A program made the translations under genes and the position numbers. Below, one piece after another: positions 13,710 through 52,304 of a DNA stretch of 64,000 nucleotides; position 1 is the stretch's first letter; the number at the start of each line of letters is the position of its first letter. Origin of the DNA: Mizuhopecten yessoensis (lineage: Eukaryota). The DNA lies in assembly GCF_002113885.1 (NCBI RefSeq), contig NW_018407426.1:1362908-1426907 (forward strand), written 5' to 3'. The notes beneath the pieces were generated by a model. That model was not told the DNA's origin and searched no databases. It worked only from the letters and a program-made list of their open reading frames with translations.

Positions 13710-13991
13710 CTTTTCACTCATGGCATTGTACTTAATGCCAAGCTCATCTCTCTCTGCCCGACTTGCTGCCAGTAGGTCCTCCACACGGTTGAGTTCTGAG
13801 GCCAGGAGTTGATTCTCCTCCTGAACCTGGTTAAGACTCGCTGACGAAGCCATCCTGCCAGGACTAGGATCGTCAGAGGTCAAGTTCTTAGTGATTATCT
13901 CCCTTATGCGGGCCGGTATCTTGGAAGGGTTGCTGTCCTCCCCTCTTACAGTGTAGTCCTCACTGTCCCTCAGCACGGAGTCTTCTAGTTT
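13710..13991 (-). CDS. CROCC: Rootletin (ciliary rootlet coiled-coil protein), conserved N-terminal exon, 94 codons, phase 0/0
   Basis: Translates KLEDSVL...IPARIREIITKNL...[48 protein letters not shown]. This closely matches the vertebrate rootletin N-terminus as I recall it (LIREIVTRNL...[38 protein letters not shown]). Acceptor gtgtttcag| at 13992 and donor AAG|gtgagt at 13709. Internal ATG at 13853 in strong context (aggATGg). The next exon was not found in 1-13709. Confidence 0.95.
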
Positions 13992-15809
13992 CTGAAACAC
14001 ACCAACATCCCATATCATTATTATAGGGCAAGGCTGTAAGCTTCTTTTTGTATTTTAAGTAAGTAATTATTACTAGAAGACAGATTTGGAGCATAAATTT
14101 AAACAAACATTGGGACAAGAAAAAGCAAGGTATGGAATATATATATAAGCATATTCAATGCTGCATTTGCCCACAACATTTGCAAAAAATGGAATTTTAT
14201 GGTAACTGCAAGGTTCAGCTTCCTAATCCTTGCAATTGTGTTTATTAGGAACACAACTAGCTTACAGACGTATATAACATACTCCTATTGAATGACTTGT
14301 ACATCTGTAACCGTACGAGGAGGAATGTTCCTCAGCGGTTTAGAAATCGTCTCCCTTGGTCATTAACCTTACAGAAATGCCCTACAACTACTCAAGTTTA
14401 GTTAGACATTCTGGAATATCAACTTGTATGTTACAGCTTTAATCAATGGTACAGATCTATACTCTGAAGTATTCGCAAACTTTCCATCTTTGTCCTGCAA
14501 AGGGTTTAGCCAATTAACAAATCAATGCTCATGATATTTTGCAAAAAAAAAATCAATTTTGGTTCAGAAAAGGAATACAAATTTCATAATACCTGTAATA
14601 TGCCAACAGGTATTTCTTAGTGATCCATATTCTAAACTGAATGTATTAAAGTAAAATTTCCAATAAAGGAATTACCTAAGCATTAAACATTATACTTCAT
14701 GTTACGTTTAAAACGTCATTCAGCAACCTTATAGCAACCAGGCCAAATTTCCTTTTGACCTAATTATTATACTGTAGGTAAACTGTTTCCCCACCGTTCA
14801 CAGATGGATTCTACCGTCTATTAAACAGGATCATACCACTGAGGTTTATAGGGATAAATCAGAGGACCACATCGTTAATATTGACTAATTAAAATTAGTA
14901 GGAGCACTTTACATTACAACTCATCAGGTTTCTGTGTACAACTTCCGGCAAACACAATTGCTCAATGGGTCGGTCAATAGCTTGGATGAAATACTGCTCA
15001 CTTAGCAATTCTGTCCCTACAACGTTGGATCAGCACTATTTACCACGGTCAATAATTTAGTTTGTAACTTCACTACAGCAGGAAATTTGACTTAGTGTAT
15101 ACAAACATTTTCTCCACCACCTAGAGGCCACATTTTGTTTATTCACTAATGATAGACCATTTAAAATGAATTTTCTTATCCAATTGAATGTTGCAGCTTT
15201 ACATATAACCTCTGAATTCTGTATACAATTAGTAGGCAGATTCATTTAGAATACACAGTATAGCCGAGGGAAATACAGACCCACATGATATGTACTATCT
15301 TAACCTGTACAGTAATACATAGCTATGTTCATGCACAGAGCTAATGGAAGAACGCTAGAAACTGGACAAGAATCATTACCACCATTATATTGTCCTAGGT
15401 GATAATACAGGTACATTCAATTGCCGTGAACCATTATCAGACATTTACTGAAGAGCTGTGCCTTCTTGATATGTAGGTTCCAGTAGTATTGTTGACAATA
15501 TTTGGTACTATTGTCTACTGTATACAGGAATCATAACCTTGCTTTACAGTGTAAATTTTCACCTTACATTGCAATTTTATAAAAGAAATATTACGAAGTC
15601 AAGAGGATTTTTTTGTCTCATTTTGGGAAGAAAATACACCATTTGGAAAGGAAACTTTCAGGAGTAAACTGCAAATTTTGGGAATAATGCATAAATAAGA
15701 AATAGTTTCAATTAGGAATGGAGCCGAATGGAGCCAATTATCCTCCCCAAAAAAGTCCCAAGAAAAAGCCCTAGGAGTATATGGATTGTACGTGTACAAG
15801 CACTGGGTG

Positions 15810-15900
15810 TTAACTCATTCACCCCTGAAACTTCGTAATGAACTATTCCAACCATTGAGTTGGAAGAGTTCAAATGTGTCTTCAGGTGTGAATGAGTTAA
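15810..15900 (+). mobile_element. 83-bp piggyBac-like MITE, family A
   Basis: TTAA-CTCATTCACCCCTG...CAGGTGTGAATGAG-TTAA, with TTAA on both sides. Confidence 0.8.
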
Positions 15901-15972
15901 TACTGTTGATCTATACATGTATACCTGTGTAACTGGAAATGAAATAGAAATGATCACCAGTTTATTTCCAGT

Positions 15973-16168
15973 GTTTCCATGGTTACGTGAAATGTAAAAG
16001 AAAAGGACTCATTATCTAATTACTGGGCTATGGTATATGTATATCCTTCAGAACTAGAATTGTATAAAGAAAATGGCTTTTACCAATTAAAATATATCCT
16101 TGGTAACTGCAATATATTGCGAAATAAAGGGTATCACCTTGTTACAGACAATACGTAACCTTGGTTAC
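15973..16168. promoter_or_regulatory. Cluster of RFX X-box-like motifs
   Basis: GTTTCCATGGTTAC (15973-15986; reverse complement GTAACCATGGAAAC fits GTHNYY-AT-RRNAAC), GTAACCTTGGTTAC (16155-16168) and a half-site ccttggtaac near 16098. The cluster is about 2 kb upstream of the rootletin exon. Confidence 0.45.
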
Positions 16169-16424
16169 TCGAGTTGTATAGAAAATGAAACGGGATTGTT
16201 AACAGGTAAAGTTCATATATCATTAATTAATAAAAATTGAGCAAAATGGGGATGGGCACCCAATTTTTAGAATGGGTCTATTGATTGTAAATATGGGACA
16301 GGTTGGAACTTGTGACCATACATTCCCTGAAATAGAAATTCAATAAATTTTTAATAATTTAAATCTGTGTTAAATCAAAAATGTGTTGAAATATATGTAG
16401 AATAAAACTGACACCATAGAAATA

Positions 16425-16515
16425 TAAACACATTTACCCCTAAAGACACATTTGAACTCTTCCAATTCAAAGGTTGGAATAGTTCATTATGAAATTTCAG
16501 GGGTGAATGAGTTAA
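16425..16515 (-). mobile_element. 83-bp MITE family A copy
   Basis: Reverse-complement copy with a degenerate left TIR. Confidence 0.75.
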
Positions 16516-19500
16516 GAGAAGGTTTTACATACAATGTACATGTGTATTTGTGTTCAGTCATATATCAAGACAACCCTTACTATAACATGACTGAAGAATG
16601 TTTCATAAAAAAAAACATAAAAAATATTGTAGTATTTAAATGAGGAATATCAAACTTAAAAAAAGATTTGTCAAGAATTTTAAAACTTGTACATAAATCT
16701 AAACCGTGATAAATGAATGAGTACAAAATGTTTTTTAAAATAAAGTCCTGGTATTGAATAGATACAAGAGTCTTTATAATGTCGTTTAATGATTTGAAAA
16801 ATCAATAACATCTCACTTCAATAGTCAATAATCTGGGATAAATGTACTAGATATAAGGCTTTTATTGATTATTCGTACAATTTCCGCCTGTATGAGCGAG
16901 GATGTTAAATTTCCCGTAATACAAGGTGACCTGACACCCACCATGTAATGACATATAACCAGGCTTTCACAACTGATGTTGTAATGATATCTAGTGTATC
17001 AAAAATATATCAAATGAGGATGACAGAAATTGGATAAAAATAATAGAAGATAAATCATGATAAAAATGTTGGATCAAACATTTACAATACACTGATGTTA
17101 AATTAAAACGAGCTTTTAATTGAGAAGGAAATCAATAGCTGATCATCACTTTGGATACGTGTCAAAGCTTGTAGGCCAGAGCTACCTATGTGTGTATGAT
17201 ATTCGTAAATGAATGAACATTTTCAATATTAAATACCTAAATTCACTGTTTTATTAACTTGAGAAGGCAATAAAGTTCATATGAGTACATAGGTATACCC
17301 TAAACAGATTGAAAACTGACTCTTAGACAATGTAGCATCACCACGTCACTGTTTAAATACCTTGAATGACAGGCCCATAAATTTAACATTAAACGACTTG
17401 TGTAAGGTGATATTATATTCAACAACCAATTCAACAATTCCTAATTTTGGGGTCAAAAAGTCACTTCCTTCGCTCAAAATTGATATGTAAAAGTATGCAA
17501 TGTTTATTAAACTATCTACATATATATAACACTAAATCTGAAAATCTTTTACAACTTTCAAGGCCATAGATTCAAAGGGATAAACTGAAGGTCAAGTTTT
17601 GGTATACACAGTACCGTTGCTGTGATTTGGTTTGTGATGATCGTGAGCTGAGTTTAATTATGATGTAGTTGACACAAAGACACAGAGTAAGTCAAACCTA
17701 CACAGTTTATGAATAATGAAGTTTTACTCTAACAACTTCAAAGTAAAAACATGGATTTTTCCTTTTAGAATTCACAATGCTATCATACAATCAGTTGAAT
17801 TTGTACTTTAAAGTGAACAGGTACATGGTGCCAGGTACACAGTTTTCACTATAAAACCTCTGAGAATGAATGTAGTATATAGAAACGTGGTAGAGGGGTA
17901 ACATAGGCAGTATTTTAATGTTGTAAAACTTTAATTATAGTCCTGGACCAAGTATGTATACCTTCATACACCCCATAGCCATCCCATAGTAAAGTGAGAC
18001 ACACATAGCAGGTCCACATGAGTCTTGACTTGTCCCTATAGGAGTGACTGTCTTCCAACACTATTTACCTATATTCCAGTATTGACATTTGCCACAAGGT
18101 TGTATACACAGGTAACATAAGCCATAGCAATCACAAAAGAATTTGTAAAATGAAACTCCAGAAAACTTTTAAAACAGGATCCGGACTACAGTATAAAATT
18201 TGGAGTCAACTTTACCGTCGATGGTAGTTTGTTGTGAATTACAAATAAAATCTAGAAATGAAAATCTAGATTATTCGAGACCAGAAAGTATTATCACAAC
18301 CTCCAAAGTATTCTCCTGATAATGATCTAATAATTAAACAACCATGAAATAGTATACCGAGTAACATATACTATAAAGATTGCTTTATTTTTGCATTAAT
18401 TCATGAGAAGTACTCATTTGCAAATTAAATCGTCTATGAAATATCAATTTCCATTGATCAGTAGAAGTACAATGAACTATCAATGTCGAAACAGTATACT
18501 CTCAATCACAAATTTTACAAACATTGTAAATAGCTTAGTTCGTGAAGTAAAGTACAAACAAAAAATTAAGTGATGCATTTACTGAGCACTATATATATAT
18601 TGATAAGATCTTTTTTAAGTTTGTTAAGTATTTTGCAGAGTAGTAAATTGACAAGGTAATAATTTTGACAAAAAAGTTTTCCGCTAATTGGCTGTTTAAA
18701 AAGGTGATATAAGTACATGTAAAATAAATAAGTATAAATATATATATATGCAGATTGAAGTAATTGTTAACCTTTTCACACAAAAGCGATTTTTTTTAAA
18801 TCAGGACTGTAATGTAATCAAATAGCCTTTGACATTCTCAAGCATCAAGATTTTTTAAAACAATTTAACTACATAGGACAATATTGGTAGGAACAAAATC
18901 GTTTCTCAAACTTGATGAACTTTACTGTGCATAGGACATACATTTTTGTGATCCATTCTGTATCAAAAAACACATTTCAAAACAAGAACCCTTTATTACA
19001 ATTCACCAGACTAAAAAAATATTTTGAAACTATGCATGATGTACTTCAAAATACATAAAACATTTATGTGATTAAAATCATTCTACAAATGAGATATTTT
19101 AACAATATTGATCTTTGTTAAAGGTTAATATAATCTTTATGTACACCTGCTTGTTAATTAAATCTTTTTTTTTTTCAAAGACATTATCATGTAATGTCAT
19201 AATTAAACAATTGAATAAGCTTGTATTGGCAACCAATAAATTGCTGGTTTTTTTCATTACAGGTGGTGAAATACTCTTTGGTCACAATTCTTATCAATTT
19301 ATGAAGTAGTTATAAATATGCCGAACAAATTCTAAGGATTCTAAATGACGAAGTTTATCACAGTGTAGCAGGGGATCCCAAACAATTAACCAATTAATCT
19401 TCGGTCAAATGGGTACATGATAATCATATACCAATATGGCTACAGAAATTCTTGATGTTTACACAATTGTCATGTTATGTAGCGATTAACATTACTTGTT

Positions 19501-19671
19501 ACCAACAACTACTGTATAGAATATGACACATTTACATAACATAATTAAGGTGTAACTGTAATTCTTGAATTCAAAATAAAGAAATTACTCCGAAATTACA
19601 TCCATCTACATTTTCTGGGGGGGGATTAGCTAGCTGGTCAATAGTTCCCCCCCCCCCCCCCCCCCCCCCCC

Positions 19672-19721
19672 NNNNNNNNNNNNNNNNNNNNNNNNNNNNN
19701 NNNNNNNNNNNNNNNNNNNNN
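19672..19721. other. Assembly gap flanked by poly-C and poly-G
   Basis: N run. Confidence 1.
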
Positions 19722-20396
19722 GGGTGGGGGGGGGGGGGGGGGGGGGGGGGTGAAGAATACGCTAGCCAATGTCTTCTGCGGAAAAAATAACTAGCCTATT
19801 TTTTTCCTTTGGGAAAGAATCGGCTAGTTATTTTTTTCCCAGAGAAAAACTTTCAGATGGGGAAATAAATGAATTCTACACCAGTAGCGGTAGACCTAAA
19901 TAAATCATATCAGGTAAAACTATGTTGTGAAAAAGATGGCCGAACATCTCGTGCTAAGATTCTGTAACATCCCAACCTCGGCTTACGCCTCAATTGGGAT
20001 TTTCTTACAGAATCTTAACCCTCGACGGAGACACTCTAACTGAAACATGTTTAGGTCTATGATACTCACACTAAAACACGTTTAAGATCTACGACGGTCT
20101 AACTGTAACACATTTCAGTCTATGAAAGTTTAAATGAAACATTTTTATGTCTGGTAATAGGATATACAAAGGCTTTCTCTTTGTATAGATCTATTGGCTT
20201 TTGAGAAATATCAGGCATGAACAATATCCTATGTGCAGAGGTTGTTTAACAGGAATTTAGCATGAAAGTGGTGTCATCGAAAACAAGATAGAATTTGATA
20301 AAGAATCAAACTCCGTGAATTGAAGAGTATGTTCTTAAATTTTGAACCAACGTGAGCCATGTTCAGTACTGAACTGTGTTGTGCTTATAATTTCTC

Positions 20397-20487
20397 TTAA
20401 CTCATTCACCCCTGAAATTTTATGATGGACTATTCCAACCTTTGAATTGGAAGAGTTCAAATGTGTCTTCAAGGGTGAATGAGTTAA
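20397..20487 (+). mobile_element. 83-bp MITE family A copy
   Basis: Intact TIRs with TTAA on both sides. Confidence 0.8.
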
Positions 20488-22644
20488 AGTGACACATTCC
20501 ACACCTGACTGAAGTCTCTATGGTAGCTATAGAGATCTGAACATTGGATTTTCTTTCAAATTCTGTGCTGGTAGTTTTGGAGAAGGTAATTTATGCATTA
20601 TCAAAATAAAAATGATTTTCAGTAGCAAGTTGTGCAGTTATGTGGTTGTAGTCTTATTGCTTAAGAAAATGAAGTAAATGGTTAGGTACACCAACAATAT
20701 CTAAAAGTTACCATGACACACAGTTATATAACTTGAAATTTCAAGGCAGCTGTCGAGATCCATTTACATCATGTAAACAGGGAAACAACTAATGAATGTT
20801 TGATATGAATAATGGTACTATACATTTTCATTTCCCTGAAAATTCTATCTCTGCTGTCAGATGTGTATGATACCATTTTTTGGCAAACAAGTGAATTGGA
20901 AATTGATAATTTGATCTACAGAGTCGGTCAACCTTCATAGGAGAGAATCACATATGAAGTGCATCTAGACAGAATATGAAACATTACTTCAACAATGCCG
21001 AGCTTGCAAGAAATACAAATTCCAGAAATAGTCAAGTGATGTCACAGCCTTGTAACTAACTATGGTATAAAATGGACATCTCTATGAGAAAGGCTTTCAA
21101 ACAATGCATCAGTTCTATAATATGTTACAGAACTTGAATGTAAGCAATCTTCAATTAGCGTCCAGAAAATTTCAAATAAATTGTACCATGTACTGTCAAT
21201 AATGAGTAGTGTATGTTTGTATATACGTTATCACTGAACTGTGAAAAGCACCCAATGCAAGTACCCAGGAGGGGAGTGTTGATCTAGATACGATCGTTTA
21301 TCAATAATGAAATAATGTGTATAATGGTTGATCAATACGATACTATAATCAATGCGATTGATTATTGATGATGATAATGAAATTTGGATCCACTTCCAGA
21401 ACCGAATACAGGATAATGGTGATACGATACTATGCTACGGTTTAAGTATCGGACAGGGTACTCCGATAGTAACAATATGACATAAACACAATAACTTCAT
21501 GGGCATGTGTAAAGTATATATTCAATATGGTTTTATATCAAGTTTCAGTACAGCTAGCATATTTTATTTTTATTGATTCCCCTTTGTGATTCACATGTAT
21601 CTGTAACAGTGATAAAGCTTCATTTCTGAAAACTTCAGTACATATTGGAAGCTATAAATTTCAGTACATATTGGAAGCTATAGGGGTGTCACAATATGGC
21701 AAATGATAAATTGTAATGTGGCGCTGGTATACCATGCATCACATTTATAGTACTCCTTAGTCACTTAATATTTTCCGAAATAAAAGGTAAATATTGAAAT
21801 ACTGGGTAAATATATTAACTTTTTCCTCCTTTGTATATCAAAATAGCAACTTCTACTCAAGGAGCTAAAGATATCAAATGATAGGCTTTATTGTGAAATC
21901 TAAAAAAAAAAATGAAAAAAAAATGAAAAAATATGGCTTTATATTGTATCTGTTACAAAATTGTAAAGGTTCAAAAACCTGTATGTGGGTTACATTCATC
22001 TTTCTCTATAACATCAATATATCATATCATATCATACAGTTCCTTCAATGAAATTCTAAAATAAGAGATAGACAGTGATACTGAACTGATACATAGTCTT
22101 TAATAATGCCTTAACTGCAGTATTATGGTATTTAGCGTCCAATACTCTACGATTACTACCCTATAGCTATCAATGGCTAGGTTCACATTATCAGGATCAT
22201 ATTTCAAGGAATTTTGGCAGATTTTCAAATCACTCTATGTATTTACCTTGCCTAAACCAGCAAATTATCAACGTGTTTTAAAAACAATTTAATTGATAAA
22301 GATCATCACCATTTTTTACACAAAGAAAAATATGCAAATTGAAACGAAATTAGTTATTTTGGAAATGAGCAACAAATTTGGTTGTGTCAATATACTATAC
22401 CGATATATAATGATTTTCCATACATATCTTACTCTCCTTAACGTACAAATTTATAATATAATATCAATAATTTAATCAAAGTTTCATTGCGTTTAACATC
22501 CAACTGAGCTGATACTGATAGAACAGCGAATTAACCGTGACATAAAGAACTATTGGTAAACCAGAAACTTCAGTATGTTGAAAGTCTTTCCTCAATTCAA
22601 AAGACCTCTTAATGAGGCCGAAATTATACAATAGCTTTAGGTCA

Positions 22645-22734
22645 TTAACTCATTCACCCCTGAAATTTCATAATGAACTATTCCAACCTTTGAATTAGAA
22701 GAGCTTAAATGTTCTTACGGGGTGAATGAGTTAA
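22645..22734 (+). mobile_element. 83-bp MITE family A copy
   Basis: Intact TIRs with TTAA on both sides. Confidence 0.8.
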
Positions 22735-22897
22735 AAGGAATTATTCCTTTTAACTCATTATAGGTCATGGTGGCCATATTGAATTTTCGATAAATTTGCA
22801 TGATAACAGTGAATTCATACTTAATTCATATTCCGTATAAATTCACTGTTATCATGCAAATTTATCGAAAATTCAATATGGCCACCATGACCTATAA
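22725..22897. repeat. Two abutting palindromes (35 bp and 140 bp)
   Basis: 22725-22759 has 17-bp perfect arms. 22758-22897 has ~63-bp arms with about one mismatch. Confidence 0.9.
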
Positions 22898-22914
22898 AGT
22901 GACAAATGGAGGTG

Positions 22915-23040
22915 ACCTGGGCCCATTTGTATAAAACATCTCAAAGTTAAGGAAAATCTCAAGCAATGTATTGTCTATGGAAAATCTTAGACTTGAGGAA
23001 ATCTCAAGAGTTGAGATGATTTATACAAGTGGGCCCAGGT
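22915..23040. mobile_element. ~125-bp MITE
   Basis: TIR acctgggcccatttgtataaaacatctcaa / ttgagatgatttatacaagtgggcccaggt. Confidence 0.7.
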
Positions 23041-23370
23041 ACCCGGAGAAAGCCAGTATGGTAAGACAGGTGACCCATATCTTTTCCTGAACTGGTATGT
23101 TCAAGGCATCAAACTCAAACCCTTGCAATCCTGGTAAAAACCCTTCCACCCATTTGTAGGTTTGGGTTTGGTTTAGTATTGTTTAATGTCCTATCACCAG
23201 TTATGAACATTTAAGGACGGCCTCCCCTGTGTGCAAGATGCATGCAAGTAGTGTACGTGTGTGTGTTTTGGGAGGCTGCGATATGTTCGTGTTTGTCTCC
23301 TTGTGATAGCGCAGAACTGATGCCGACTTTATAGTGCTTAACTCACCATTTACTACTCACTGGCCACCCG
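23041..23370 (-). mobile_element. SINE fragments
   Basis: acccggagaaagcc motif, plus a tail (ggttt)n...tgtttaatgtcct and tttatagtgct, typical of antisense mollusc SINE ends as I recall them. Confidence 0.35.
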
Positions 23371-25084
23371 TCCACCCATTTGTATTTCTAGTGATTCACC
23401 AGAGTGTTTGTCCTACTTTCTTTTAGTCAATCAAATTATCTAACAATACTCTTAGGAGATACTATATATACATGTATAAAGGGAACACTTGTCCTTCTAG
23501 GCATAACATCTACTGGATGGCCATGAGGCCATATCATAGAAAACATGGAACCTCATAATGGCAAGTTTCAGTGAAATCAGCCAATTCAAAATTGACTGAA
23601 GTTTTGAAATAGTTTTCTAAAATGATTGTGATGACAGCCCTATTAGATTTCTGATTATAACAAAAAAAGAGGATTATAGAAGCTACATGCCCATAAAGTA
23701 TCGCTAAAATCTCTTCAGAAGTTAGGACACTGTTCTTCATATTCTGTTGGAAATGTAAAATGTTTATGCACCACAGATGAGGAATGGCGACAGATTGCAA
23801 TAGGTGACCAGCTAATGATAATGACAGATATTAAACGACATTGTGTATGTAACTAAGTGACAACCTGATACAAGTTTACCTACAAAATGTTGTCATAACA
23901 AGTGTAAAGTTTGTCTCAGAAAGCATTGGTCACATACAATAAATTATACCTCTAAAAAGGCCAAAGGAGACCTTCTACAATGTAGTAAAAAAAAATGGGG
24001 GAACAAGAGGGGCATATATCACCTAATGTGGACCCGAAGTTCTTTTTTAACAAGTTTCTAAATTCCATATTCACCTTGTCCTATCACTTTACCAGGTACA
24101 TGTACATTTCCCACAAAGCATTTTTAACAGGGTTGTTTTGATGGTAAACTGTCTTGTCAAACTGTTTGTTTATTTAGGGTTTTTTTCATTTCGCTTCCAA
24201 TTTAAAAATGTTGATTCACCACTGAATCGCATTTCAATCATTTCACTGTTAAAAAAACCCTGTACCACTGCCCAAAAATGGTCACTACGAAATGGAAACT
24301 TTTTACCCCCATGACAATAGCCTTAATATTAAGCCATCTCTGAAAAGAAATTCTTGCAAAACTTTAACCAAAAATAAAGAAAAGAAAATTGAAATAAAAA
24401 AAAACAATTAATTAACTTCATACACAGTGTTCTGAGCGTAAAATTGCAACAGGCCAGAATGAGATTAGGATTCAAACCTTAGACCACTAAACCACAATAT
24501 GGATGCTCACAAAACTGAGCTACCTGGGGTCTGTTTGTTTATGGGGAACACCCAGTTTGTTTGTTTTTAAATGTTAATGTTACATTTTTGGGTATAAATC
24601 CTGGCAGACCTGCAAATGTTTATGCAGGCCTTGCAAGGCTTTGTCAAGGGTTGCCTGAGAGCAGCATCAGATTACTAGCTCCAACCTCATTTCATAAAAG
24701 AACAATTCTGTTCCAACTGTTCAACAGTTTGGATCGCAATAAACGAAAGCGGCCCAAATCACTGGTAGTTCACCCACACAGTCCAATTACAATATCTTCA
24801 AAAACAAAATTAAGGGGGATTTTACTGCATATAAGACAAGAAACTATAAATGAATTCCCCCTGTGTGCAATTAACAGTGGAAAACTCTGCTGCGCATCCT
24901 CTGCTGACTCCTCCCCCACCCCCCAAAAAATGGATTCCAATTTGACAGAAAGATATGGTTATAATCTTAACAAAAGTTGTTTACAATAAATTTTGGCCAA
25001 CCAATGCATTGAATAATAATTTCTGAACAGAGGTTGTGTCAAAACATCTTGTTCACGGCTGTATACCACTATTCGTGCACGAAT

Positions 25085-42372: not shown

Positions 42373-42744
42373 GGTGCAGTACAAAACCCATGTGTGCCTC
42401 AGCATTCCTACCTGTTTACTGGTGGCAGCACCATGCAACTTCCTCTGTAAAAATAGTTTGTCACATGCATGAAATAAAACTGCAAAAACAGCTTATATGA
42501 GTGGAAGTAGAGGATGAATCAGCAGGTAACATTTCAAACTGGTCTGCCTAATCTCCATAGTTAATACCTGAGTTGCCAGCTCATCAGAAAATAATACATT
42601 GTTGATTTGAACTACTTCTCTGCCCGTACTGGCTTGTATTTGTACCCTTAGATACCAAATCTGGGCTGCTGGAATGACAAAACGGGGTCATACAGTCTGG
42701 TTAGAGGTCAATTATAGTCTGGTCATTGATCGGGTGATAGGTCA

Positions 42745-43005
42745 TATGATCAGGTCACCGGTCATACAATCAGGTCATCGGTCTACAATCAGGTCACAGT
42801 CATACAATTGGGACACAGGTCACACAATCAGGTCACAGGTCATACAATCAGGTCACATGTCATTGCAATCAGGTCAAGGGGCATACAATCAGGTCACAGG
42901 TCATAACAATCAGGTCACAGGGCATACAATCAGGACACGGAGCATACAATCAGGACACAGGTCACACAATTAGGTCACAGGTCATTCTATAAGGTCACAG
43001 GTCAT
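42745..43005. repeat. ~20-bp minisatellite
   Basis: Unit caggtcacaggtcatacaat. Confidence 0.9.
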
Positions 43006-43944
43006 TACATGTACCACCCTCAGTGAGTCAGGCAATTTTGTACATAGTGTACTTTGTTGTCCAATTTTTTGCTTCATATCTGTTAAGTGACTTCCTTTCT
43101 ACATACGAATATATCCGCTTATGTCTGTATCAAATAATATCTCCTATGTCTGTAAAAGGTGTAGTAACATTATCCTGTTTATATATGGAGTAACAATATC
43201 ATGTCGTTTTAGTAAAAAATTATGGTATAAAATTGTCATGTTGTCATCACAATGGCAAAACCTAAAAATTAGATTTTTAAGCATCATGTTAGTCCACACA
43301 AGTACATAACTCTTCTTGTATAATTTTCTAACCAAATGCATGAAAAATTAAGGTTAAACCAAAACAAATGGCTATCAAGTATATTTTATAAGTTATTAAT
43401 TTGGGTATACCATGAGAAAGAGGTCAGCCATTCTGATTTATATTTATGTTATCAGGTCAAATCTCCAGCTACAGGTACACATTAGCATTCATGAAGGCCT
43501 GATGTGACCCTTATTAATTAAAATCAATTATAAAACATGCATATATATACATTAATTAGATATATCTGTCCTCTAATGTCTCGATACGTATTGTGGCTTT
43601 GTTACAGGGACATTCTCATACTGTCCAAAGTACTGTACTTTGGACATGTGTGTATCAGCAATAAACCAGTATGTACAAGTAACCAAGTTCTTTGTCATGG
43701 TCTATTAAAGAGATATTTACCTCAGGTACTTTATCTTTAAATATTAGACACGGTTACACTCTATCATTCCAAGACACTATTGTTTTACGATGAATTCAGT
43801 GCTCACAACTTATTGGAATACTTGCTTAAGTACAGATCACATAATATAAGAAATAATCAATGGAAAATCTGAATAAAAACCCCAGTACTGTACTAAAAAA
43901 ATATATACAAATTCACATTAAAGGGAAATAACTCTGTCACACAG

Positions 43945-44683
43945 TTTTTTAGCCTGGTACGTACATCACTTCAGACATAATCTCTGTGGGCTCTGACATC
44001 CAATGAAAATTGATTTTCTATTTCCAAACACCTTCTACCTTATAATTCAGTAAAGCATCTGTCATTCGTCTGTTAACATTTCTTAAAACAGCTTCTTCTA
44101 AAGGACTAAAAGACCTAGGGTCTAGAAGCTGCTACTTCTGAAGAAGTGCTGTAAAGTTTCCTCAGATAAATGACTTTGACTAAACTTTCAAAGTTACATG
44201 GTTCAAATGTGCTCAATAGCGCTGTAGAGCCTTAATGCTGTAGTAGTGTGTTGAAGTTGAAGATCTTGTTGCGGTCAAATTTTTTAAGAAATTTGTCAAT
44301 TTAAGTTACATAAGGTCTAGGTTCGTGATATATAGGCAGTAGCTTTGTGGGGTAAACTACTTTAAACTTTCCTCAATTAATTCACTTTTACCTACTTTGA
44401 AAGTCACCAGGGTCAGAAATGTTAAAAACTTCAAACATTATTATGGAAAAAGTCAGGAGGTCGAGAGCAACGATACATTGGTGTTATAAGGACTGCAGTC
44501 CAGTTTTGCACATCTTTCTTTTTTCTGATATCAACTTTAAGCATCACCATTATGCAAATTACAGGTCAGAAAAAATGTTCAGTGGTTAAGCTTATGTGAT
44601 CTAAGTGTAAAATTATGCTAACATGAACCTTACATATGACGACAGCCCAGGTGAGAACTGCAGGCCCTCTTGGCCTGTTGTTT
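43945..44683 (-). mobile_element. Degenerate pearl/HINE-type element
   Basis: Begins ttttttagcc, contains ctgtcattcgtctgttaacatttc (microsatellite remnant) and degenerate internal core repeats, and ends with caggtgag...aggccctcttggcct-gttgtt, the typical opposite-end palindrome. Confidence 0.55.
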
Positions 44684-45472
44684 CTTCTTTTTGTCTTGTT
44701 TGTACATTTCAATTCTTGGAAATATTAAACTTTTGAAATTTGAAAATATTACATTGATAATTCAGAAACATTTCCGGGTCGTAATTATTGAGCATTATTT
44801 ATGTACCGGCATAATGATTTCAATAAAAGGTGGTCTGGCGTTAATAATTCATGTCTAGCACGTATCATTGTGAAGGAAATCGCTGATCCCTATTACACTT
44901 CACACTGTTTGGACATTATCTTGTATAGGGCCCAATTGGTCTGGTGTTCTTGTTGGATGAATGTCAATATGGAAAATATAGAAGACCTCACATGACATTT
45001 GACTTCATATGACCTTTGACATGTATGAGATAGATATAGTGACCTTTGACCTTTGACCTATTGTATAAAATTTGGTATTATTGTATATGTATATATATGT
45101 AACTGAAATAAGGTCTATTAAGGCAAGCCTGGGCTCTGGAATCAGTATTTTGGCCCTATCAGAATACCTTTCATGATAGATTTTCGGTTTTGTGACAGTG
45201 TGTATAATGATATGTACTCTTCACACACATTTCTGTAGCGAACAAATCTGTCAACACCTTTTCTGTCCCCACCTGTATGGCTTACCTGTTAAATACAGGT
45301 GCCAATATATATTTAACAGGTTATTCTGTATCTTTTACCTTCTACAGTTGTACTGCTATCGTTATTTCAAATTCAATATGAAACATGTTGATGTACATTT
45401 GGAGGCCACCCGAGGGAAATCTGTGTGTACATAAAGAGGCCACCTGTGGGGACATTGCTATTCAAATATAGA

Positions 45473-45608
45473 AGCCACCCCTGGGGAGTCTGTATACATA
45501 TATAGAGGCCTAGGCCACCCTTGGGGAGTCTGTATACATATATAGAGGCCTAGGCCACCCCTGGGGAGTCTGTATACATATATAGAGGCCTAGGCCACCC
45601 TTGGGGAG
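45473..45608. repeat. 40-bp tandem repeat, 3+ copies with degenerate flanking copies
   Basis: Unit ggccacccctggggagtctgtatacatatatagaggccta. Confidence 0.9.
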
Positions 45609-47037
45609 ATCTGCATGTAAATCTATAGAGGCCTTAAAATTTAAGGCCCCCATTGTGTGTGCATGTAAAAGGGGCCACCCTACGGAGATTTAAACATACT
45701 GTACATAAAATAGAGGCCTGCATTATACTGATGAGACCTGTATCTGTGTGAAGAGGGCATCACTATAGACAGGGTGTTATTGTAGACAGTCACTCATTCT
45801 AGATGGGGTGACCTTCACCTTTGCCTGTATTATCATGAATATAACTACAGATTATTTCAAACCTAACTGTAGGGGATGTCGTCACAGCATTAATACCAAG
45901 CATTGTTTGTGAAAATCAATAAGGTTCCACGATTATTATGGTGCATCCTCTTTCATTGATCTTATTAACAAAAATATGCCGAGTCAGCAAATATTGACGT
46001 TTAGTGGTTTTGTTTGGAAATAATGATGATAAACAGCTATGGGCACTGAGAACTTATGACAATGGAGTTATAAACATTCTGTCACACACGTCGGCACATA
46101 TTTATGTCAATGAGATGGTAAAATTGTTGATTTTTTTTCCTATGAAGACTTGCATGATGTTGCCAGAAATGGCATTCTCCTTCAATGAAATCTGTATTTT
46201 TCTTTAAATTGTATAAACATTATATACAATCTTAACAAATCAACGATGACCTAGACCAACACTTTTATTCATCTTCCTTGACCTTTATTCCAGAACTGTT
46301 ACCTTGGCTTTAAAATACATATGCTTTTATAATAAGGTCAGATGATGAGGCTTAACATTTTTGGTAAGTTTTGCATGCTCTTCTTATAATTAAATTAATT
46401 TCAAAAATATGTAAATTGTTTCATAGTAGTTTGATTGATTGAAAACAAAATGGCCACTCTGCAGGGAATACTAGGCTTTTGAAACTACACTTACAAACAC
46501 TTTAACAGTGACTAATTGAGTTAAGATGTCTGCATTATTTAAAAAAAAAAATTTGCCTGCAGTATATAAAGAAGAGAGGAATAGTCCATGGATCAATAAA
46601 TTTGATGAGAGGAATGTGATTTAAGTACCTGACACCTCACATTCCATGATACCTACATACCTACATACCAGTACCTACCAGGTCCCATCTTATCCCTTAT
46701 ACATGTATACGTAGTATGCTTAGTAGTTTGTAAATTCTGAGACGGGCCAAGACTGTCGGAGACAAATTTGGCAACCATTAAAAAATCAATTGAGATGCAG
46801 ACACTCAGTATATACCAAGATACAGTTAAGACAAATAATGAAGATTTTGTTTTACCCCCCACAACGAAGTTAGGGAGAGTATTTTCAAAATATTTATCCG
46901 TAAAAAATCTCTATTTCTAAGAAACCAGCAAAAAGTTACCAATGATAAAATATGTTCTTGAAGAGTAATGGATAACAGAAGCATTAACGTAGTCTGGTAT
47001 AAAAATGAAACCCAAAGGCAGTTTAAATTGACCTTCT

Positions 47038-47128
47038 TTAACTCATTCACCCCTGTAATTTCATAATGAACTATTCCAACCTTTGAATTGGAAGAGTCCA
47101 TATATGTCTTCAGGGGTAAATGAGTAAA
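47038..47128 (+). mobile_element. 83-bp MITE family A copy
   Basis: Same internal sequence, aactattccaacctttgaattggaagag. Confidence 0.75.
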
Positions 47129-48735
47129 GTTTGGCTTCTGGTGTGGTCACTATGGTCACTATAGACAGGTTGTAATCTGAGATTGACTTCAGATTTACTA
47201 CAAGATTTATTATGTACACAGCAGCATGAGGATCAATACCCCTAGCTGACCTTTGCCCTCCGGTACCTGGACATGAAATATTCATGCCACTCTACTATAG
47301 GGACATTAAAAGTGTAGTTTTGTAGTAACAGTCCAGCACTAATTATGTATATATACAGTCAGGTGGTACAGCATATAGTCAGCAAGTCGACTACGTCTGC
47401 TCCGCTGGTATTTAGGATCCCGGTACCACTGCCAAATTCATCGGAAACTTTTATTCTGTTATTAGTATAGCTTTTATAAATCATTTCTGGAAAGGAAATC
47501 TTGTTTTGTGGAAATAATAAAAATGGAGAGAAAAAGCGAAAAAAATCAACAGTGATCTGAGTGAAAAAATGTAATCGACCGGACCAGGTTTGGAACCATG
47601 GATCTGCAATACTGACAAACTAACCTACTGAGCTACCTCACTCACAGGTCAACATTAATTAGGACAATAGGTTTCCAAAACGAAAATAAGGCAAGGTTAA
47701 TAAACGTACGGTAATCTGTCGAGGAATCATCTAGATTTTGCTTGCAGTTGGACTGCAGTGATCCTTCAAACTTGAAATGCTAAAACTTCACGAACTTGCA
47801 GGTTTCAAAATTCTCATCTGTTGCCTGTTTTATAGCAGACTGATATGAAACCCAGTAGTAGCTCATAGTGGAGAATATGTTCGTAAATGACTGGTTTCAT
47901 ACCATTATAAATGTTACATGTAAACTTGCGTTCAGAACAAAGTCATTCACTAAATGGTGAATCAGCCATTTTGTGGGAACAAGGTTGTGTTTTCTATGGT
48001 TACTATTTCAATAAGGCAAATTAACCATTAGGCCTATTAATTAATTTTTACTGCCGATAAACTTTCTGGTTCTGATTATAGCTGATAATTACAGTGGCCC
48101 ACAAGACCATGATTTTAATTTGAATTAACTGAAAATGGAAATTGAAAAGAAAAATAAATAAATAATGGATGTATGTTTTGTGAAACATCGAACCATTTTT
48201 ACATTCCATAGATATTCTTGTTTTTGTGAAACTTGGTCTGGAGTTATAAGATAATCTTGGATTACTAAACCTCCGTGGATCTCACAGATTATCAATAACT
48301 TACATTATTCAGTTACATGATGGTTGATTGCATTTTTTTATGAACTTCCTTGTGGCACTTTAAAGATTAAACAGCTAGAATGACTCTGAGATGCAGGAAT
48401 TATCATGTGTATTGTTTGGACTTGTGGGTAGGATTTACAATGTTTATTACGGTACCGTTGGGACTAGTTATAGGACCGTGTATTCTGTGTAGAGACCTTT
48501 TCGTGTGACAATATTCATGTTTTATGTATGTGTTGGGCTTCAGTGCCCATGTTTACACCTGCTCTGCCGCCTTACCGGCACTGCGGGCATTTATCACCTC
48601 ATATGTTACTTCTATATATGTATATTCTCAAATCAAAAGGAGATCTAAATGATATTTTATTGGTTTAGCAGTGCAACCATTTCAAGTACCTTACCTGCTT
48701 TTAAACTAATTTTGTATTAAATTCATTTACATTTA

Positions 48736-49100
48736 TTATTATTACACACACCCTGCAATTAAGTTGGGAGGGGGGGGCAGGGTATACTGGAGCCAGGTTG
48801 TCTGTCTGTCTTTTTGTCCATTATTGTTCACACTTCTCCTCTCAAATTAATGCACCAATTTCAACTCATTCACCCCAGGAGACATATTTGAACTCTTCCA
48901 ATACAAAGGTTGGAATAGTTCATTATGAAATGTCATGGGTGAATGACTCAGTTAAGGATACTTTGTACACAGAACCTTCCAAATATATGGAACTATGCCC
49001 CCTTTTTAACAAAAATATTTGCACTATACCTGACCTCAAGCACTGCACCAATTTGAGTGATATCCTTGGTTTACATAAGACTGCAATCAAGGGGTTGTGA
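48736..49100. mobile_element. DINE-1/HINE-like element remnant, interrupted by an 83-bp MITE
   Basis: accctgcaattaagttgggag...gggtatac hairpin followed by (gtct)n. A truncated relative, tttacccccc acaacgaagttaggg, sits at about 46851. Confidence 0.45.
48861..48951 (-). mobile_element. 83-bp MITE family A copy
   Basis: Reverse-complement copy with degenerate ends. Confidence 0.7.
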
Positions 49101-49597
49101 ATAAAATATCAAAATAAGAACTGCCTCACCAATAATGGAAAACATCATTATTTTTAATGTTACAGAAAACCTGCTTTTTGTTCCTATTGAGTTATATTAC
49201 TGTATTAATATCTATCTTGTTGTTCTAACTCCATAGAGATCATAAATGGGACCAAAATGATTAGAAACATTAGATGCCATTGTGGTGCTCTGTCTTATTA
49301 GCCTGGTATTATAGAAACATTTTGTGATCACTAGATTCCTTGCCTATTAATTGCCTTAAGTAACAAATACAACGATTCATGTTGATACACATTAAATGGG
49401 TTCCAGCCATCACCACCTGTGGCTAATATCGGATCATTAAATGTAATACTCCATCAATTGATTTTACCTATGAATTAATGTATCTGATTCAGGAGATTCC
49501 TATTAGGCCAAAACAAGTGTATGTGTGTTTCAGGTGACATGACTGAAAAAATAGGGTAGGACAGTAGGGATTTAATTTAATTTTATTATTATATTAT

Positions 49598-49688
49598 TTA
49601 ACCCTTACATCCCTATGTAACTTTAGTAGACTCTACCATGCATTGATCTGGATGTGACCATTATGGTCTACAGTGGTGAAAAGTTTAA
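49598..49688 (+). mobile_element. 83-bp MITE family B copy
   Basis: Diverged copy sharing actctaccatgcat.gatctggat...cattatggtcta with 53690-53780. Confidence 0.7.
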
Positions 49689-49987
49689 GGGAGGGGGCCA
49701 ATTTAAGAAATTACGAAAATCCCCAAAGATTTAGAACATACTGTATTCATTATTCTTTTATTTAGGTCTTGTAAATAATAATATGGTATTTAAATTTGGT
49801 TTTGATACCTACATATGAAATAAAGAGGTGTCATAAAAATGCTTATGAGTTTTTCGGCATTTGAGTGAGATAAAATTGTTTGTGAAAGAGGTAAAAATAA
49901 GGGTCGATCAGGGTAGCTGAAAATATCAAATTTTCTTTTGGCTTTACATATATAAGAGGTCAAGGCTGACAGTTGTGATTGAGTTAT

Positions 49988-50368
49988 TGTCACCCTGGTA
50001 AGTTACTAGCCTCTTCCAACTTACTTAGCTAGGGAGAGTTTATCTTTAGCTAAGTCTATAAAGTGCCAGATGAGTAATCCATAGGTCCCTAGTTCGACTC
50101 CTAGCTGAGGCATTGAAAACATAATGACCTCCGTTACATTGGACACCCATTTCACCCAGTAAAAATTGACAAAATTAGTAAGTAGTATTTTACAAGAATT
50201 ACTGTGACCCCTGGAAGACTCTGGAGAAGCCCTTTCCTGGACGGGAAATATGTTGCTATGGTAAATTACTTGCTGCTTCCAATCAACTATGCTAGGTAGA
50301 ACTTCTCCTAAACTTATTCAAAAGAGAGTATGACTAATAAACAAGAGATCCTAAGTTCAACCCCTAGC
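49988..50368 (+). mobile_element. Degenerate two-LTR TRIM (second family) with a B-box in the LTR
   Basis: LTR1 49988-50138 (tgtc...gttcgactcc...cgttaca), then ttgg and a 112-bp spacer ending ggacgggaaata. A truncated LTR2 from 50251 has a matching head (tggtaa.ttact.gc..cttccaa) and gttcaacccctagc. Confidence 0.5.
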
Positions 50369-51197
50369 AAGGTCAAGGCTGACAGTTGTGATAGAGACAT
50401 GATCTATACGACAGTTGAAGGTTGACAGTTGTAGTTGAGTTATGATCTATAAATGGTCAAGGCTGACAGTTGTGATGGAGACATGATCTGTAAAAAGTCA
50501 AGGCTGAATGTTGTGATAGAGTTATTATCTTTACAAGGTCAAGTCTGACAGTTGTGATGGAGACATAATATATACAAGGTCAAAGCTGACAGTTGTGATG
50601 GAGACATGATCTTTACAAGGTCAAGTCTGACAGTTGTGATGGAGACATAATATATACAAGGTCAAGGTTGAAAGTTGTGATCGAGACATGATCTGTACAA
50701 AGGTCAAGGCTGACAGTTGTGATGGAGTATGATCTGCACAAGGTCAAGGATTACTGTTGTGATGGAAACATTATCTGTACAAGGTCAAGGCTGACAGATA
50801 GAGACATGATCTGTACAAAGGTCAAGGCTGACTTGTTATGGAGACATGATCTGTACAAGGTCAAGTCTGACAGTTGTGATGGAGACATACTCTGTACAAA
50901 GGTCAAGGTTGACAGTTGTGATGGAGACATACTCTGTACAGAGGTCAAGGTTGACAGTTGTAATGGAGACATACTCTGTACAAAGGTCAAGGCTGACAGT
51001 TGTGATGGAGACATTATCTATATAAGGTTAAGTCTGACAGTTGTGATGGAGACATCTATACAAGGTAAAGGCTGACAGTTGTGAAGGAGACATTATCTAT
51101 GCAAGGTCAAGTCTGACAATTGTGATGGAGACATAATGTATACAAGGTCAAGGCTGACAGTTGTGATGGAGACATGATCTATACAAGGTCAAGGCTG
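50368..51197. repeat. 41-42-bp minisatellite
   Basis: Unit aaggtcaaggctgacagttgtgatggagacatgatctgtac. One orphan unit lies at about 49955-49987. Confidence 0.95.
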
Positions 51198-51323
51198 AGG
51201 TAACATGTTAATATTTTGATCTGTATGCTTAGCTGTTGATGGAACATGTCAAAGTCCATTCACTTATATGTGGATGCAGTATTTAGTAACCAAGGTAACA
51301 TAATACTGTAGGAGAAAACTTAC

Positions 51324-52304
51324 ATGTCTCTCATCATCGTCAAGGTAATATCCTAAAGGACTGCTGCTGTTCGGAAGGTCCATGTACATTTTGTACCCGA
51401 TCGGTCGGCCCACCATCGTGTAGGGTGTCATGCTCTTCTTTTGTGTGTACGACCTTGGCTGTGTATACTTTGACCTTAGAGAGTCAAATTTAGATCCAGG
51501 AGGAGACACGTCACGAGAATGGGGTCGATAGCCAGCCCTATAGAGCTGTCCGAATCTGGCGTTGACATCAGTGAAGATGTCACTAACTATAGATGACTGA
51601 CCATCATCATGGAAACCTAGCATCAGCTCGTCTGTGGATGTGCTCTGACGTTTTGTCACGTTCTTAGCAGACGGCAGGTCATGGAAACCTTCCTCATCCA
51701 ATTCATTCTCTTTGAAGTTGACATTTTCATCGTCACTAACACTACCTATGTTTTCATCACTGTCACTGTCTTTATCAATGTATTTATCCTCATCATCAGC
51801 CTCCTTACCAATATTTTCATCACTGTCACTGTCTTTATCATCATCTTTATCCTCATCATCAGCCTCCTTACTTTCACTTTGAGGCTTTGTCTCTATATCA
51901 CTGAGAGCATCTAAGAACTCACCTTGTCCAGAGTGCTCCTGTTCATCGATAACTTCAGGAACAATTTGCTGGGATATTTGATCACCAGTAGTTTCTAATT
52001 TGTCTACCTTTTCTGAGGTCATCATTTCACCTTTGACCTCTTCTTCCATGCCCTCCACATCAATGATGTCCACATCCTGTTTAGGTATGATGTAGTCTAG
52101 TTCCTCCTCAGTGACCGCCACTGCATCCACAAAATCTCGAGAATCTTCCATATCCTCCACTCCGTCCCCCTCACTCCTGTTCTGACTGACCTCTCCCTCT
52201 GGCCCCTGATTTCCAGGGGTGAGGCTGTGTTCCTCATCCCCAGGGGGAAGACCATCCACACTGGACCCATCCAGAGACTCTCCGTTGGTTTTGTTTACAT
52301 CCAT
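51324..52304 (-). CDS. Large acidic, low-complexity first coding exon (327 codons); candidate alternative N-terminus of rootletin
   Basis: Longest ORF in the window. First in-frame ATG is at 52304, after an in-frame TGA at 52359-52361. The sequence is D/E-rich and ends ...PLGYYLDDDERH|gtaagt, a consensus donor in phase 0 that is compatible with the phase-0 acceptor at 13991. Assignment to CROCC is inference. Confidence 0.75.

What the first reader, a model, noticed from the sequence alone, without database searches (positions are those of the whole stretch)
13710..52304. Acidic 327-codon exon nested antisense in PEX2 intron 3 may give rootletin a new N-terminus
Seen in sequence: an ATG-initiated D/E-rich exon (52304-51324, minus) ends in a phase-0 gtaagt donor. 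The only recognisable downstream minus-strand coding exon is the rootletin exon, with a phase-0 acceptor 37 kb away; the join would read ...DDDERH|KLEDSVL.... PEX2 exons 1-3 lie between them on the other strand. Known: vertebrate rootletin has only a short peptide before this block. Inference: a long isoform with a disordered acidic head is transcribed antisense through the PEX2 promoter, so a ciliary rootlet gene and a peroxisome-import gene are interleaved, with scope for transcriptional interference.
Basis: partly seen in the sequence, partly recalled or inferred. Interest (0 to 1): 0.75.

Follow-up and report, generated by a model that had tools for sequence, protein, structure and literature searches.

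The report
Rootletin's acidic head exon inside PEX2

Summary
ATG 52304 to 51324 (minus strand) is a single-copy 327-codon ORF ending in GTAAGT. The exon at 13991-13710 is the conserved N-terminal rootletin block.

The proposed join is supported. RefSeq rootletin-like proteins of Argopecten irradians (2498 aa) and three Mytilus species (2401-2431 aa) all begin with the orthologous acidic head. The Argopecten locus is collinear with the window, including across the N gap. It has a 30-kb first intron with the PEX2 exons on the other strand. In Mytilus galloprovincialis the annotated PEX2 and rootletin genes overlap antisense by about 33 kb. A gastropod also has the head exon nested in this PEX2 intron.

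The head is under purifying selection (dN/dS 0.18) and is predicted disordered.

One addition: intron 1 holds a conserved short alternative first exon (27051-26947) behind an RFX X-box-like block. A short, vertebrate-like isoform probably exists as well.

Transcriptional interference with PEX2 remains untested. Interest is modest: this is a database-annotated lineage feature that appears undescribed in the searchable literature.

The parts
51324..52304 (-). Rootletin coding exon 1a, the 'head': ATG plus 327 codons, acidic and predicted disordered. Conserved motifs: DENIGSVSDDE, TDELMLGFHDDGQSSIVSDIFTD, FDSLRSKYTQPR, PLGYYLDDDE.
   Evidence: Homologues. Orthologous to residues 1-291 of Argopecten rootletin-like. 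dN/dS 0.18. AlphaFold2 mean pLDDT 48.6.
51318..51323 (-). 5' splice site GTAAGT, phase 0.
   Evidence: Conserved as GTAAGT in Argopecten. Most homologous genomic ORFs read V-S, V-R or V-I (that is, GT) directly after the conserved end.
13992..51323 (-). Proposed intron 1 of the long isoform, 37,332 nt including the estimated gap. It contains the PEX2 5' exons on the other strand, candidate exon 1b, several minisatellites and the N gap.
   Evidence: The Argopecten equivalent is about 30.1 kb. Collinearity.
13710..13991 (-). Rootletin coding exon 2 (94 codons, KLEDSVL...IKYNAMSEK), the start of the conserved rootletin N-terminal block.
26947..27051 (-). Candidate alternative first coding exon 1b (35 codons, MYPANIRMNSPPVRDRS...LAEKLALW, then GTAAAT, phase 0).
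   Evidence: Conserved ATG, donor and a frame-keeping 6-nt indel in Argopecten. Homologous to the first exon of the Mytilus rootletin model VDI23436.1, which is spliced to RLEDSVL.
27100..27200 (-). Conserved promoter-like block upstream of exon 1b: GACGC, an RFX X-box-like site (27178-27191, GTAACTGTGGCAAC) and AAACCGGAAAT (ETS-like).
   Evidence: The motif count in the window is not above chance, so the weight comes from positional conservation in three bivalves.
35810..35887 (+). PEX2 coding exon (LDAAELDNEVISLVKSQLMQLFKYHQ), phase 0 at both ends.
   Evidence: 89% nt identity to Argopecten. Homologous exons lie next to Pex2_Pex12-annotated genes in Batillaria and Mytilus.
37662..37724 (+). 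PEX2 coding exon (TNTLVKYGPEVDALLKILIWK). The intron that follows it holds the head exon.
19672..19721 (.). Assembly gap (N) between a poly-C and a poly-G run, inside intron 1.
   Evidence: The flanks are collinear with Argopecten. Not filled.
52305..53252 (-). Region upstream of the head ATG, conserved with Argopecten (about 74% identity). Candidate 5' UTR and promoter of the long isoform; the transcription start site is unknown.
51743..51871 (-). 63-nt x 2 tandem duplication inside the head exon (KEADDEDK..DSDSDENIG twice), absent from Argopecten.

Best explanation
The ORF at 52304-51324 is the first coding exon of the scallop's rootletin orthologue. Its phase-0 GTAAGT donor is spliced across a roughly 37-kb intron to the phase-0 acceptor at 13991. 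The result is a rootletin of roughly 2,500 residues (2498 in the Argopecten ortholog), in which the conserved coiled-coil N-terminal block is preceded by a head of about 330 residues. That head is acidic and intrinsically disordered, and carries four short conserved motifs. Vertebrates have about 26 residues in its place.

The exon and its promoter sit antisense inside the PEX2 intron that follows the exon at 37662-37724. The long pre-mRNA must therefore be transcribed across PEX2's 5' exons and promoter.

What is shown:
- The exon, its splice sites and its conservation.
- The same join in gene models of four other bivalves.
- The conserved interleaving with PEX2.

What is inferred:
- That the join is used in this species.
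- That the head is a flexible, motif-bearing arm projecting from the N-terminal end of rootletin. Published work places that end at the A-band and reports that it binds kinesin light chain 3 and Nesprin1 (PMC11623930).
- That a second, RFX-type promoter with short exon 1b (27051-26947) produces a vertebrate-like short isoform.
For: Orthologous gene models:
- the 90% cluster of the nearest homologous ORF contains XP_069116600.1, rootletin-like (Argopecten irradians, 2498 aa).
- its residues 1-291 are the head (65% identity in BLASTP; 73% over the 291 aligned codons) and residues 292-385 are exon 2 (93% identity), joined directly.
- seven RefSeq isoforms from three Mytilus species carry the same head and the same junction.

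Gene structure and collinearity:
- in Argopecten, exon 1 is followed by a 30-kb intron, then exon 2, then a 23-kb intron.
- the window is collinear with that locus, and the PEX2 exons lie inside intron 1.
- the Argopecten protein maps exon by exon on the minus strand of C4099, from 1415211 down to 1300475.
- donor and acceptor are conserved.
- Mytilus PEX2 and rootletin are annotated as overlapping antisense genes.

Coding constraint and structure:
- 17 distinct homologous ORFs, nearly all starting with MD and most ending at a GT directly after the YYLDDDE motif.
- dN/dS 0.18.
- mean pLDDT 48.6, almost no secondary structure.
Against: The XP_ proteins are automatic predictions. I could not see what evidence supports them, and a predictor can extend a 5'-incomplete model to a strong upstream ORF.

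Three submitter annotations model the head as a separate small protein: Pinctada imbricata KAK3104800.1, Mytilus coruscus CAC5355767.1 and Batillaria P0014. Two of these simply read through the donor into the intron.

An older Mytilus model starts rootletin at the short exon instead.

In Batillaria and in contig ctg82300, no rootletin exon 2 was found within 16-18 kb downstream of the head exon.
Confidence: 0.85

Rival explanations
1. The head exon belongs to a separate small gene nested in the PEX2 intron, with its own short, unrecognised downstream exon or exons. On this view, the RefSeq joins to rootletin are artefacts of gene prediction.
For: Stand-alone models exist in Pinctada imbricata (295 aa), Mytilus coruscus (302 aa) and Batillaria (339 aa, with a terminal exon 6 kb downstream). 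No rootletin exon lies within 16-18 kb downstream in Batillaria or in ctg82300. Phase compatibility alone has a one-in-three chance.
Against: The Pinctada and M. coruscus models just run on into the intron after the conserved GT. The Batillaria model lacks a start codon and its tail has no counterpart in the window. No other conserved same-strand exon was found between the head exon and exon 2, in scallop against scallop or in gastropod against ctg82300. Four independently annotated genomes give the identical junction.
Confidence: 0.08
2. Rootletin's main ciliary transcript starts at an internal RFX-type promoter and at short exon 1b (27051-26947), giving a vertebrate-like short N-terminus. 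The head isoform would then be an additional form from a distal promoter, possibly tissue-restricted. This complements the best explanation and does not exclude it.
For: The ATG, the phase-0 donor and a frame-keeping 6-nt indel are conserved in Argopecten. The exon is homologous to the first exon of Mytilus model VDI23436.1, which is spliced to RLEDSVL. An upstream block (GACGC, X-box-like site, AAACCGGAA) is conserved in three bivalves. From my own knowledge, untested here: ciliary genes, including rootletin orthologues in nematodes and flies, are typical RFX targets.
Against: None of the eight RefSeq proteins seen uses this exon. The X-box-like motif is not over-represented in the window (4 found against 2.6 expected). 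The coding stretch is too short for a dN/dS test. The exon was not found in Batillaria or ctg82300.
Confidence: 0.45
3. The ORF is a non-expressed relic or a repeat-derived open frame.
For: Nothing beyond the lack of RNA data for this species.
Against: It is single-copy. dN/dS is 0.18 against dS 0.89. The start codon and donor are conserved across bivalves and a gastropod.
Confidence: 0.02

Closest known systems
RefSeq rootletin-like proteins of other bivalves: XP_069116600.1 (Argopecten irradians), XP_076086637.1 (Mytilus galloprovincialis LOC143057256 isoform X1), XP_071147036.1 (M. edulis), XP_052082353.1 (M. californianus)
   Same: All have an acidic head of about 290-300 residues that starts with MD and carries the same four motifs. 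All join it directly to [KR]LEDSVL, followed by the Pfam Rootletin domain and a long coiled coil. PEX2 overlaps on the other strand.
   Different: The window's head is 65% identical to Argopecten by BLASTP and about 33% identical to Mytilus. It carries a species-specific duplication of 21 codons. Its first intron is 37 kb, against 30 kb in Argopecten. The relatives are computed models, and no paper in the searchable library describes the head.
Vertebrate rootletin (CROCC) and CROCC2
   Same: The exon-2 block is shared at 44-55% identity (KLEDxVL..ARIREI..QEEN.LL..L.R.EDLLA..ERDEL). So are the Pfam Rootletin domain and the long coiled coil. The N-terminal end is the part reported to lie at the A-band and to bind KLC3 and Nesprin1 (PMC11623930).
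   Different: Only 26 residues precede the block in four CROCC2 proteins, and about 31 in a ray's rootletin-like protein. There is no acidic head. I know of no relation to PEX2 in vertebrate genomes; that point is my own knowledge and was not tested.
Antisense-overlapping or nested gene pairs with alternative distal first exons (a general feature of animal genomes)
   Same: A distal first exon and its promoter sit inside an intron of the neighbouring, divergently transcribed gene. The two primary transcripts therefore overlap over the neighbour's 5' end.
   Different: Here the entanglement is conserved between bivalves and a gastropod (for the head exon and PEX2). It involves a 327-codon coding first exon and not a short UTR exon.

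Membership tests
Rootletin (CROCC family) | Conserved N-terminal block directly before the Rootletin domain | tested here: met
   Window 13991-13710 is 93% identical to Argopecten rootletin-like residues 292-385 and 44-55% identical to vertebrate CROCC2 and rootletin-like proteins.
Rootletin (CROCC family) | Pfam PF15035 (Rootletin) domain on the same strand, downstream | tested here: met
   Hits of 68.6 and 57.9 bits at C4099:1329399-1329572 and 1328934-1329080, and model positions 1-25 at 1340193-1340267, all on the minus strand.
Rootletin (CROCC family) | Long collinear coiled-coil body of about 2000 residues or more | tested here: met
   Twenty-two exon matches to the 2498-aa Argopecten protein on the minus strand of C4099. 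Eighteen run collinearly from 1415211 down to 1300475; the other four belong to the partial second copy at 1259758-1262728. Coiled-coil propensity itself was not computed.
Rootletin (CROCC family) | Head exon physically joined to exon 2 in mRNA of this species | not testable with these tools
Bivalve long-headed rootletin-like (RefSeq models) | Head homologous over its full length, with the start codon conserved | tested here: met
   Full-length match of the head to P0018 residues 1-291, E = 1e-125. Nearly all homologues start with MD.
Bivalve long-headed rootletin-like (RefSeq models) | Same exon 1 / exon 2 junction and conserved splice signals | tested here: met
   Junctions in 8 RefSeq proteins. 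GTAAGT donor and CAG acceptor align with Argopecten.
PEX2 (peroxisome biogenesis factor 2) | Pfam PF04757 (Pex2_Pex12) domain | tested here: met
   29.5 and 28.2 bits at C4099:1437290-1438045, plus strand, beyond the window's end. PEX10 and PEX12 share this domain, so it does not by itself single out PEX2.
PEX2 (peroxisome biogenesis factor 2) | C-terminal RING finger | tested here: inconclusive
   An ORF in L005 reads [25 protein letters not shown]. It was not scanned against Pfam.
PEX2 (peroxisome biogenesis factor 2) | N-terminal exons in the window belong to the same gene as the Pex2_Pex12 exons | tested here: inconclusive
   Homologous exons lie 5' of Pex2_Pex12-annotated genes on the same strand in Mytilus and Batillaria. 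The resemblance of the exon to human PEX2 'SQLDALELN' rests on my memory. The ATG exon was not found.

The most novel reading that the evidence does not exclude
The rootletin locus of molluscs has had two promoters since before bivalves and gastropods split. One is a proximal RFX-type ciliary promoter, giving a short vertebrate-like protein. The other is a distal promoter locked inside a PEX2 intron, giving a form with a long acidic, motif-bearing head. That head would recruit partners to the rootlet's A-band; its aromatic-acidic motifs, SDIFTD and GYYLDDDE, resemble kinesin-light-chain-binding W/Y-acidic motifs. Use of the distal promoter would necessarily run polymerase antisense through the PEX2 promoter, coupling rootlet assembly to peroxisome-import gene expression.
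Probability: 0.15. Interest if true: 0.55.

Novelty: new member of a known kind. Interest (0 to 1): 0.3.

Why it matters

It also shows that mollusc rootletin carries a disordered acidic head of about 300 residues at its N-terminus. Structural work places that end of the molecule at the A-band, where membrane and motor partners are thought to dock. This gives a natural long-head/short-head comparison for testing what the rootletin N-terminus does.

The conserved antisense interleaving with PEX2, together with the candidate internal RFX promoter, gives a tractable case for studying alternative-promoter use and transcriptional interference.

None of this changes a general principle, and the long form is already present in public gene models of relatives.

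Tried and rejected
1. Pfam scans of the two exons and of 20 other ORFs gave nothing useful.

2. The exhaustive profile search of 1.84 billion representatives returned only ORFs of 255-477 aa. I first read this as 'never joined to rootletin'. That was wrong. The 2498-aa RefSeq protein was hidden as a member of the cluster represented by a 293-aa genomic ORF.

3. A word search with the last 100 residues of the head, meant to catch junction-crossing fragments, found nothing.

4. The tails of P0008 and P0014 (LSEPPTPEL and LCLALPRTPQV) looked like a shared next exon. P0008's tail is followed by its own GTAAGT in a genomic contig, and no such motif exists in the window. I dropped this lead.

5. The in-frame ATG at 14018, 9 codons upstream of the acceptor, was a possible rootletin start. 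It is not conserved; in Argopecten the nearby ATG is out of frame.

6. PEX2's ATG exon was not found by motif search, by translating the conserved blocks, or by a conserved ATG-plus-donor screen. The ORF MSDRRKKADQQPLML at 34932 has no usable donor.

7. No rootletin exon 2 lies downstream of the head exon in Batillaria (16 kb searched) or in ctg82300 (18 kb searched).

9. I built no spliced (joined) protein or cDNA model.

Full report
**1. The observation**

On the minus strand, an ATG at 52304 opens 327 codons. They end with CAT at 51324 and are followed by GTAAGT. An in-frame stop lies 18 codons upstream of the ATG. The stop-to-stop frame is 364 codons, in DNA of 35-41% GC.

The peptide has 86 D/E residues among 327 and a pI of 4.1. 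Residues 1-230 are acidic and residues 231-327 are mildly basic. The exon is single-copy in the 988-Mb assembly.

The acceptor reads tgtgtttcag|AAACTAGAAGAC at 13991, the exon has 94 codons, and GTGAGT follows 13710.

**2. The assembly gap**

The N run at 19672-19721 lies between a poly-C and a poly-G tract, inside the proposed intron. Reading frame is therefore not at issue.

Continuity across the gap was tested by synteny. The window is collinear in one orientation with a chromosome-level assembly of Argopecten irradians (locus L014), from window 2278 to 58644. Anchors lie on both sides of the gap: 18071-18168 on one side, and 21275-21316 and 22192-22228 on the other.

**3. Is the head exon real coding sequence?**

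A word search found five homologous ORFs. A profile search of 1.84 billion representatives found fourteen, two of them also among the five. Nearly all begin with MD. They share four motifs: DDNIGSVSD, TDEL..GF.DDG.S.VSDIFTD, FDSLRS.YTRPR and P.GYYLDDDE. Most stop being similar exactly where a Val codon (GT) follows, and then hit a stop codon within a few residues. These are genomic ORFs running on into an intron, so the start codon and the donor position are both conserved.

Against the Argopecten orthologue, dN/dS is 0.18 with dS 0.89. AlphaFold2 gives mean pLDDT 48.6 and pTM 0.12, with almost no secondary structure (the alignment was shallow). 'Disordered acidic head' is a fair description.

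**4. What the donor joins to**

All representatives in the profile search were 255-477 aa, and I first took this as evidence against a link to rootletin. Listing cluster members overturned that. The 90% cluster of the nearest ORF (P0001) contains XP_069116600.1, 'rootletin-like [Argopecten irradians]', 2498 aa (P0018).
- Its residues 1-291 are the head (65% identity to the window in BLASTP; 73% over the 291 aligned codons).
- Its residues 292-385 are exon 2 (93% identity).
- The junction reads ...YYLDEDERQ|KLEDSVL....

A region search with that protein then found the Mytilus galloprovincialis protein (2416 aa, Pfam Rootletin), and listing that protein's cluster brought in the M. edulis and M. 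californianus relatives. All seven RefSeq isoforms listed (2401-2431 aa) start with the head and read ...EED(S/N)K|RLEDSVL... at residue 298.

On Argopecten DNA, exon 1 is followed by a 30-kb intron, then exon 2, then a 23-kb intron. The GTAAGT donor and the CAG acceptor align base for base with the window.

The Argopecten protein maps exon by exon on the minus strand of this contig:
- residues 1-291 at C4099:1414231-1415211, which is window 51324-52304;
- residues 290-387 at window 13704-13997;
- residues 385-449 about 36 kb further on;
- the last exon at 1300475.

The Pfam Rootletin exons lie in that stretch. The gene therefore spans about 115 kb, and its first two introns are about 37 and 36 kb.

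I did not build a joined model of the two exons; each was searched separately by reference.

**5. Vertebrate comparison**

In four CROCC2 proteins the block starts at residue 27, after MSS..LGLD.VIQ. In a ray's rootletin-like protein it starts at about residue 32.

**6. PEX2**

Two plus-strand exons lie between the two rootletin exons:
- 35810-35887 (LDAAELDNEVISLVKSQLMQLFKYHQ);
- 37662-37724 (TNTLVKYGPEVDALLKILIWK).

Both have good splice signals and are 89% and 85% identical in nucleotides to Argopecten.

The Pex2_Pex12 domain and a RING-like exon follow 10-12 kb beyond the window's end. The head exon therefore sits in the PEX2 intron of about 36.6 kb that follows the 37662-37724 exon.

The same nesting is found elsewhere:
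- in Argopecten;
- in a locus of GCA_018292915.2, which papers connect with the gastropod Batillaria attramentaria;
- in an unidentified ENA contig.

In Mytilus galloprovincialis the annotated PEX2 gene (311 aa, Pex2_Pex12) and rootletin overlap on opposite strands for about 33 kb.

I could not find PEX2's ATG exon. 'Intron 3' and 'exons 1-3' are therefore only partly verified.

**7. A second, short first exon**

An older Mytilus model (VDI23436.1) starts rootletin with 47 different residues before RLEDSVL. Its motif HGSPPVRD hits the window at 27033-27001 and hits the collinear place in Argopecten.

At that place, 27051-26947 on the minus strand, the window has an ATG followed by 35 codons (MYPANIRMNSPPVRDRSRLPNVSERDRLAEKLALW) and then GTAAAT, in phase 0. 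Argopecten keeps the ATG and the donor, and differs by a 6-nt indel that preserves the frame.

About 130 nt upstream lies the best-conserved stretch of the intron. It reads GACGC, then an RFX X-box-like site (GTAACTGTGGCAAC; GTAACCGTGGCAAC in Argopecten; ATTACC-T-AGCAAC in Mytilus), then AAACCGGAA(A/G)T. The motif alone is not above chance in the window (4 matches against 2.6 expected). The argument rests on positional conservation in three bivalves.

If this exon were entered from the conserved upstream CAG in the head's reading frame, it would hit TAA after 18 codons. It is therefore not a coding cassette of the long form. I read it as a probable alternative first exon with a ciliary-type promoter, at about 45% probability, complementary to the main explanation. 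None of the RefSeq proteins seen uses it.

**8. Mechanism**

Shown: the exon structure, its conservation, and the interleaving with PEX2.

Inferred: transcription starts upstream of 52304, where about 950 nt are conserved with Argopecten. It runs antisense through PEX2's first exons and promoter. Splicing then removes 37 kb. The protein carries a flexible acidic head at the N-terminal end of the coiled coil.

A cryo-tomography study places that end at the rootlet's A-band, with putative membrane links, and cites binding of KLC3 and Nesprin1 to it (PMC11623930). A docking or spacer role for the head is my inference. So is the idea that its aromatic-acidic motifs bind kinesin light chains. Transcriptional interference with PEX2 is possible but untested.

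**9. Limits**

I went on with other tools and did not use read laying, so there is no RNA evidence from this species.

The XP proteins are automatic predictions, and I could not inspect the evidence behind them.

The genome's size and contig count match what I recall for the Yesso scallop assembly. That is memory and not a test. What is tested is close kinship to Argopecten.

**10. Novelty and verdict**

I found no paper linking rootletin with PEX2, or describing a mollusc-specific head, in the searchable library. The long form is, however, already in public gene models of four relatives.

Novelty class: new member of a known kind. Interest: about 0.3.

Noticed in passing
window 26947-27200 (minus strand): Conserved short ATG exon (35 codons, phase-0 donor) behind a block of GACGC, an X-box-like site and an ETS-like site. 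It is shared with Argopecten and Mytilus. Candidate internal RFX-type promoter and alternative first exon of rootletin.
   Followed up: partly
window 27543-28412; also 32685-32950 and 33760-34510: Long blocks inside intron 1 are conserved with Argopecten (77% over 892 nt; 83% over 267 nt; 73% over 768 nt) and have no clear reading frame. They may be regulatory DNA, the PEX2 promoter or 5' UTR, or old shared repeats.
   Followed up: partly
window 51743-51871: A 63-nt unit is duplicated in tandem inside the head exon, adding 21 acidic codons. Argopecten lacks it.
   Followed up: yes
G000:C4099:1259758-1262728 (about 100 kb left of the window): A second copy of several rootletin 3' exons (matching residues 1530-1829 and 2385-2465 of the Argopecten protein at 89-93% identity) lies 38 kb beyond the gene's last exon. 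It is either a partial duplication or an assembly duplication.
   Followed up: no
window 36071-37419, 38956-40266, 41080-41637, 50368-51198, 54731-56661, 57117-57929: Six sizeable minisatellites (periods 17-128 nt). The first fills most of the PEX2 intron between 35887 and 37662 and accounts for the strong GC skew there. The one at 50368-51198 lies just downstream of the head exon's donor.
   Followed up: partly
window 15715-16008, 16428-16640, 20338-20517, 42150-42497, 46829-47146, 48705-49097, 60411-60644: A dispersed repeat occurs on both strands. Its translation reads THSPLKTHLNSSNSKVGIVHYEISGVNEL. One copy carries a canonical X-box-like sequence (15973-15986) that is not conserved in Argopecten.
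   Followed up: no
window 52316-52362 (minus strand): Just upstream of the head ATG there is a GTGAGA donor-like site (ACAG|GTGAGA) and, 46 nt later, a TTGTACAG acceptor-like site. That is too close together for an ordinary intron. It may mark the boundary of an upstream 5' UTR exon.
   Followed up: no
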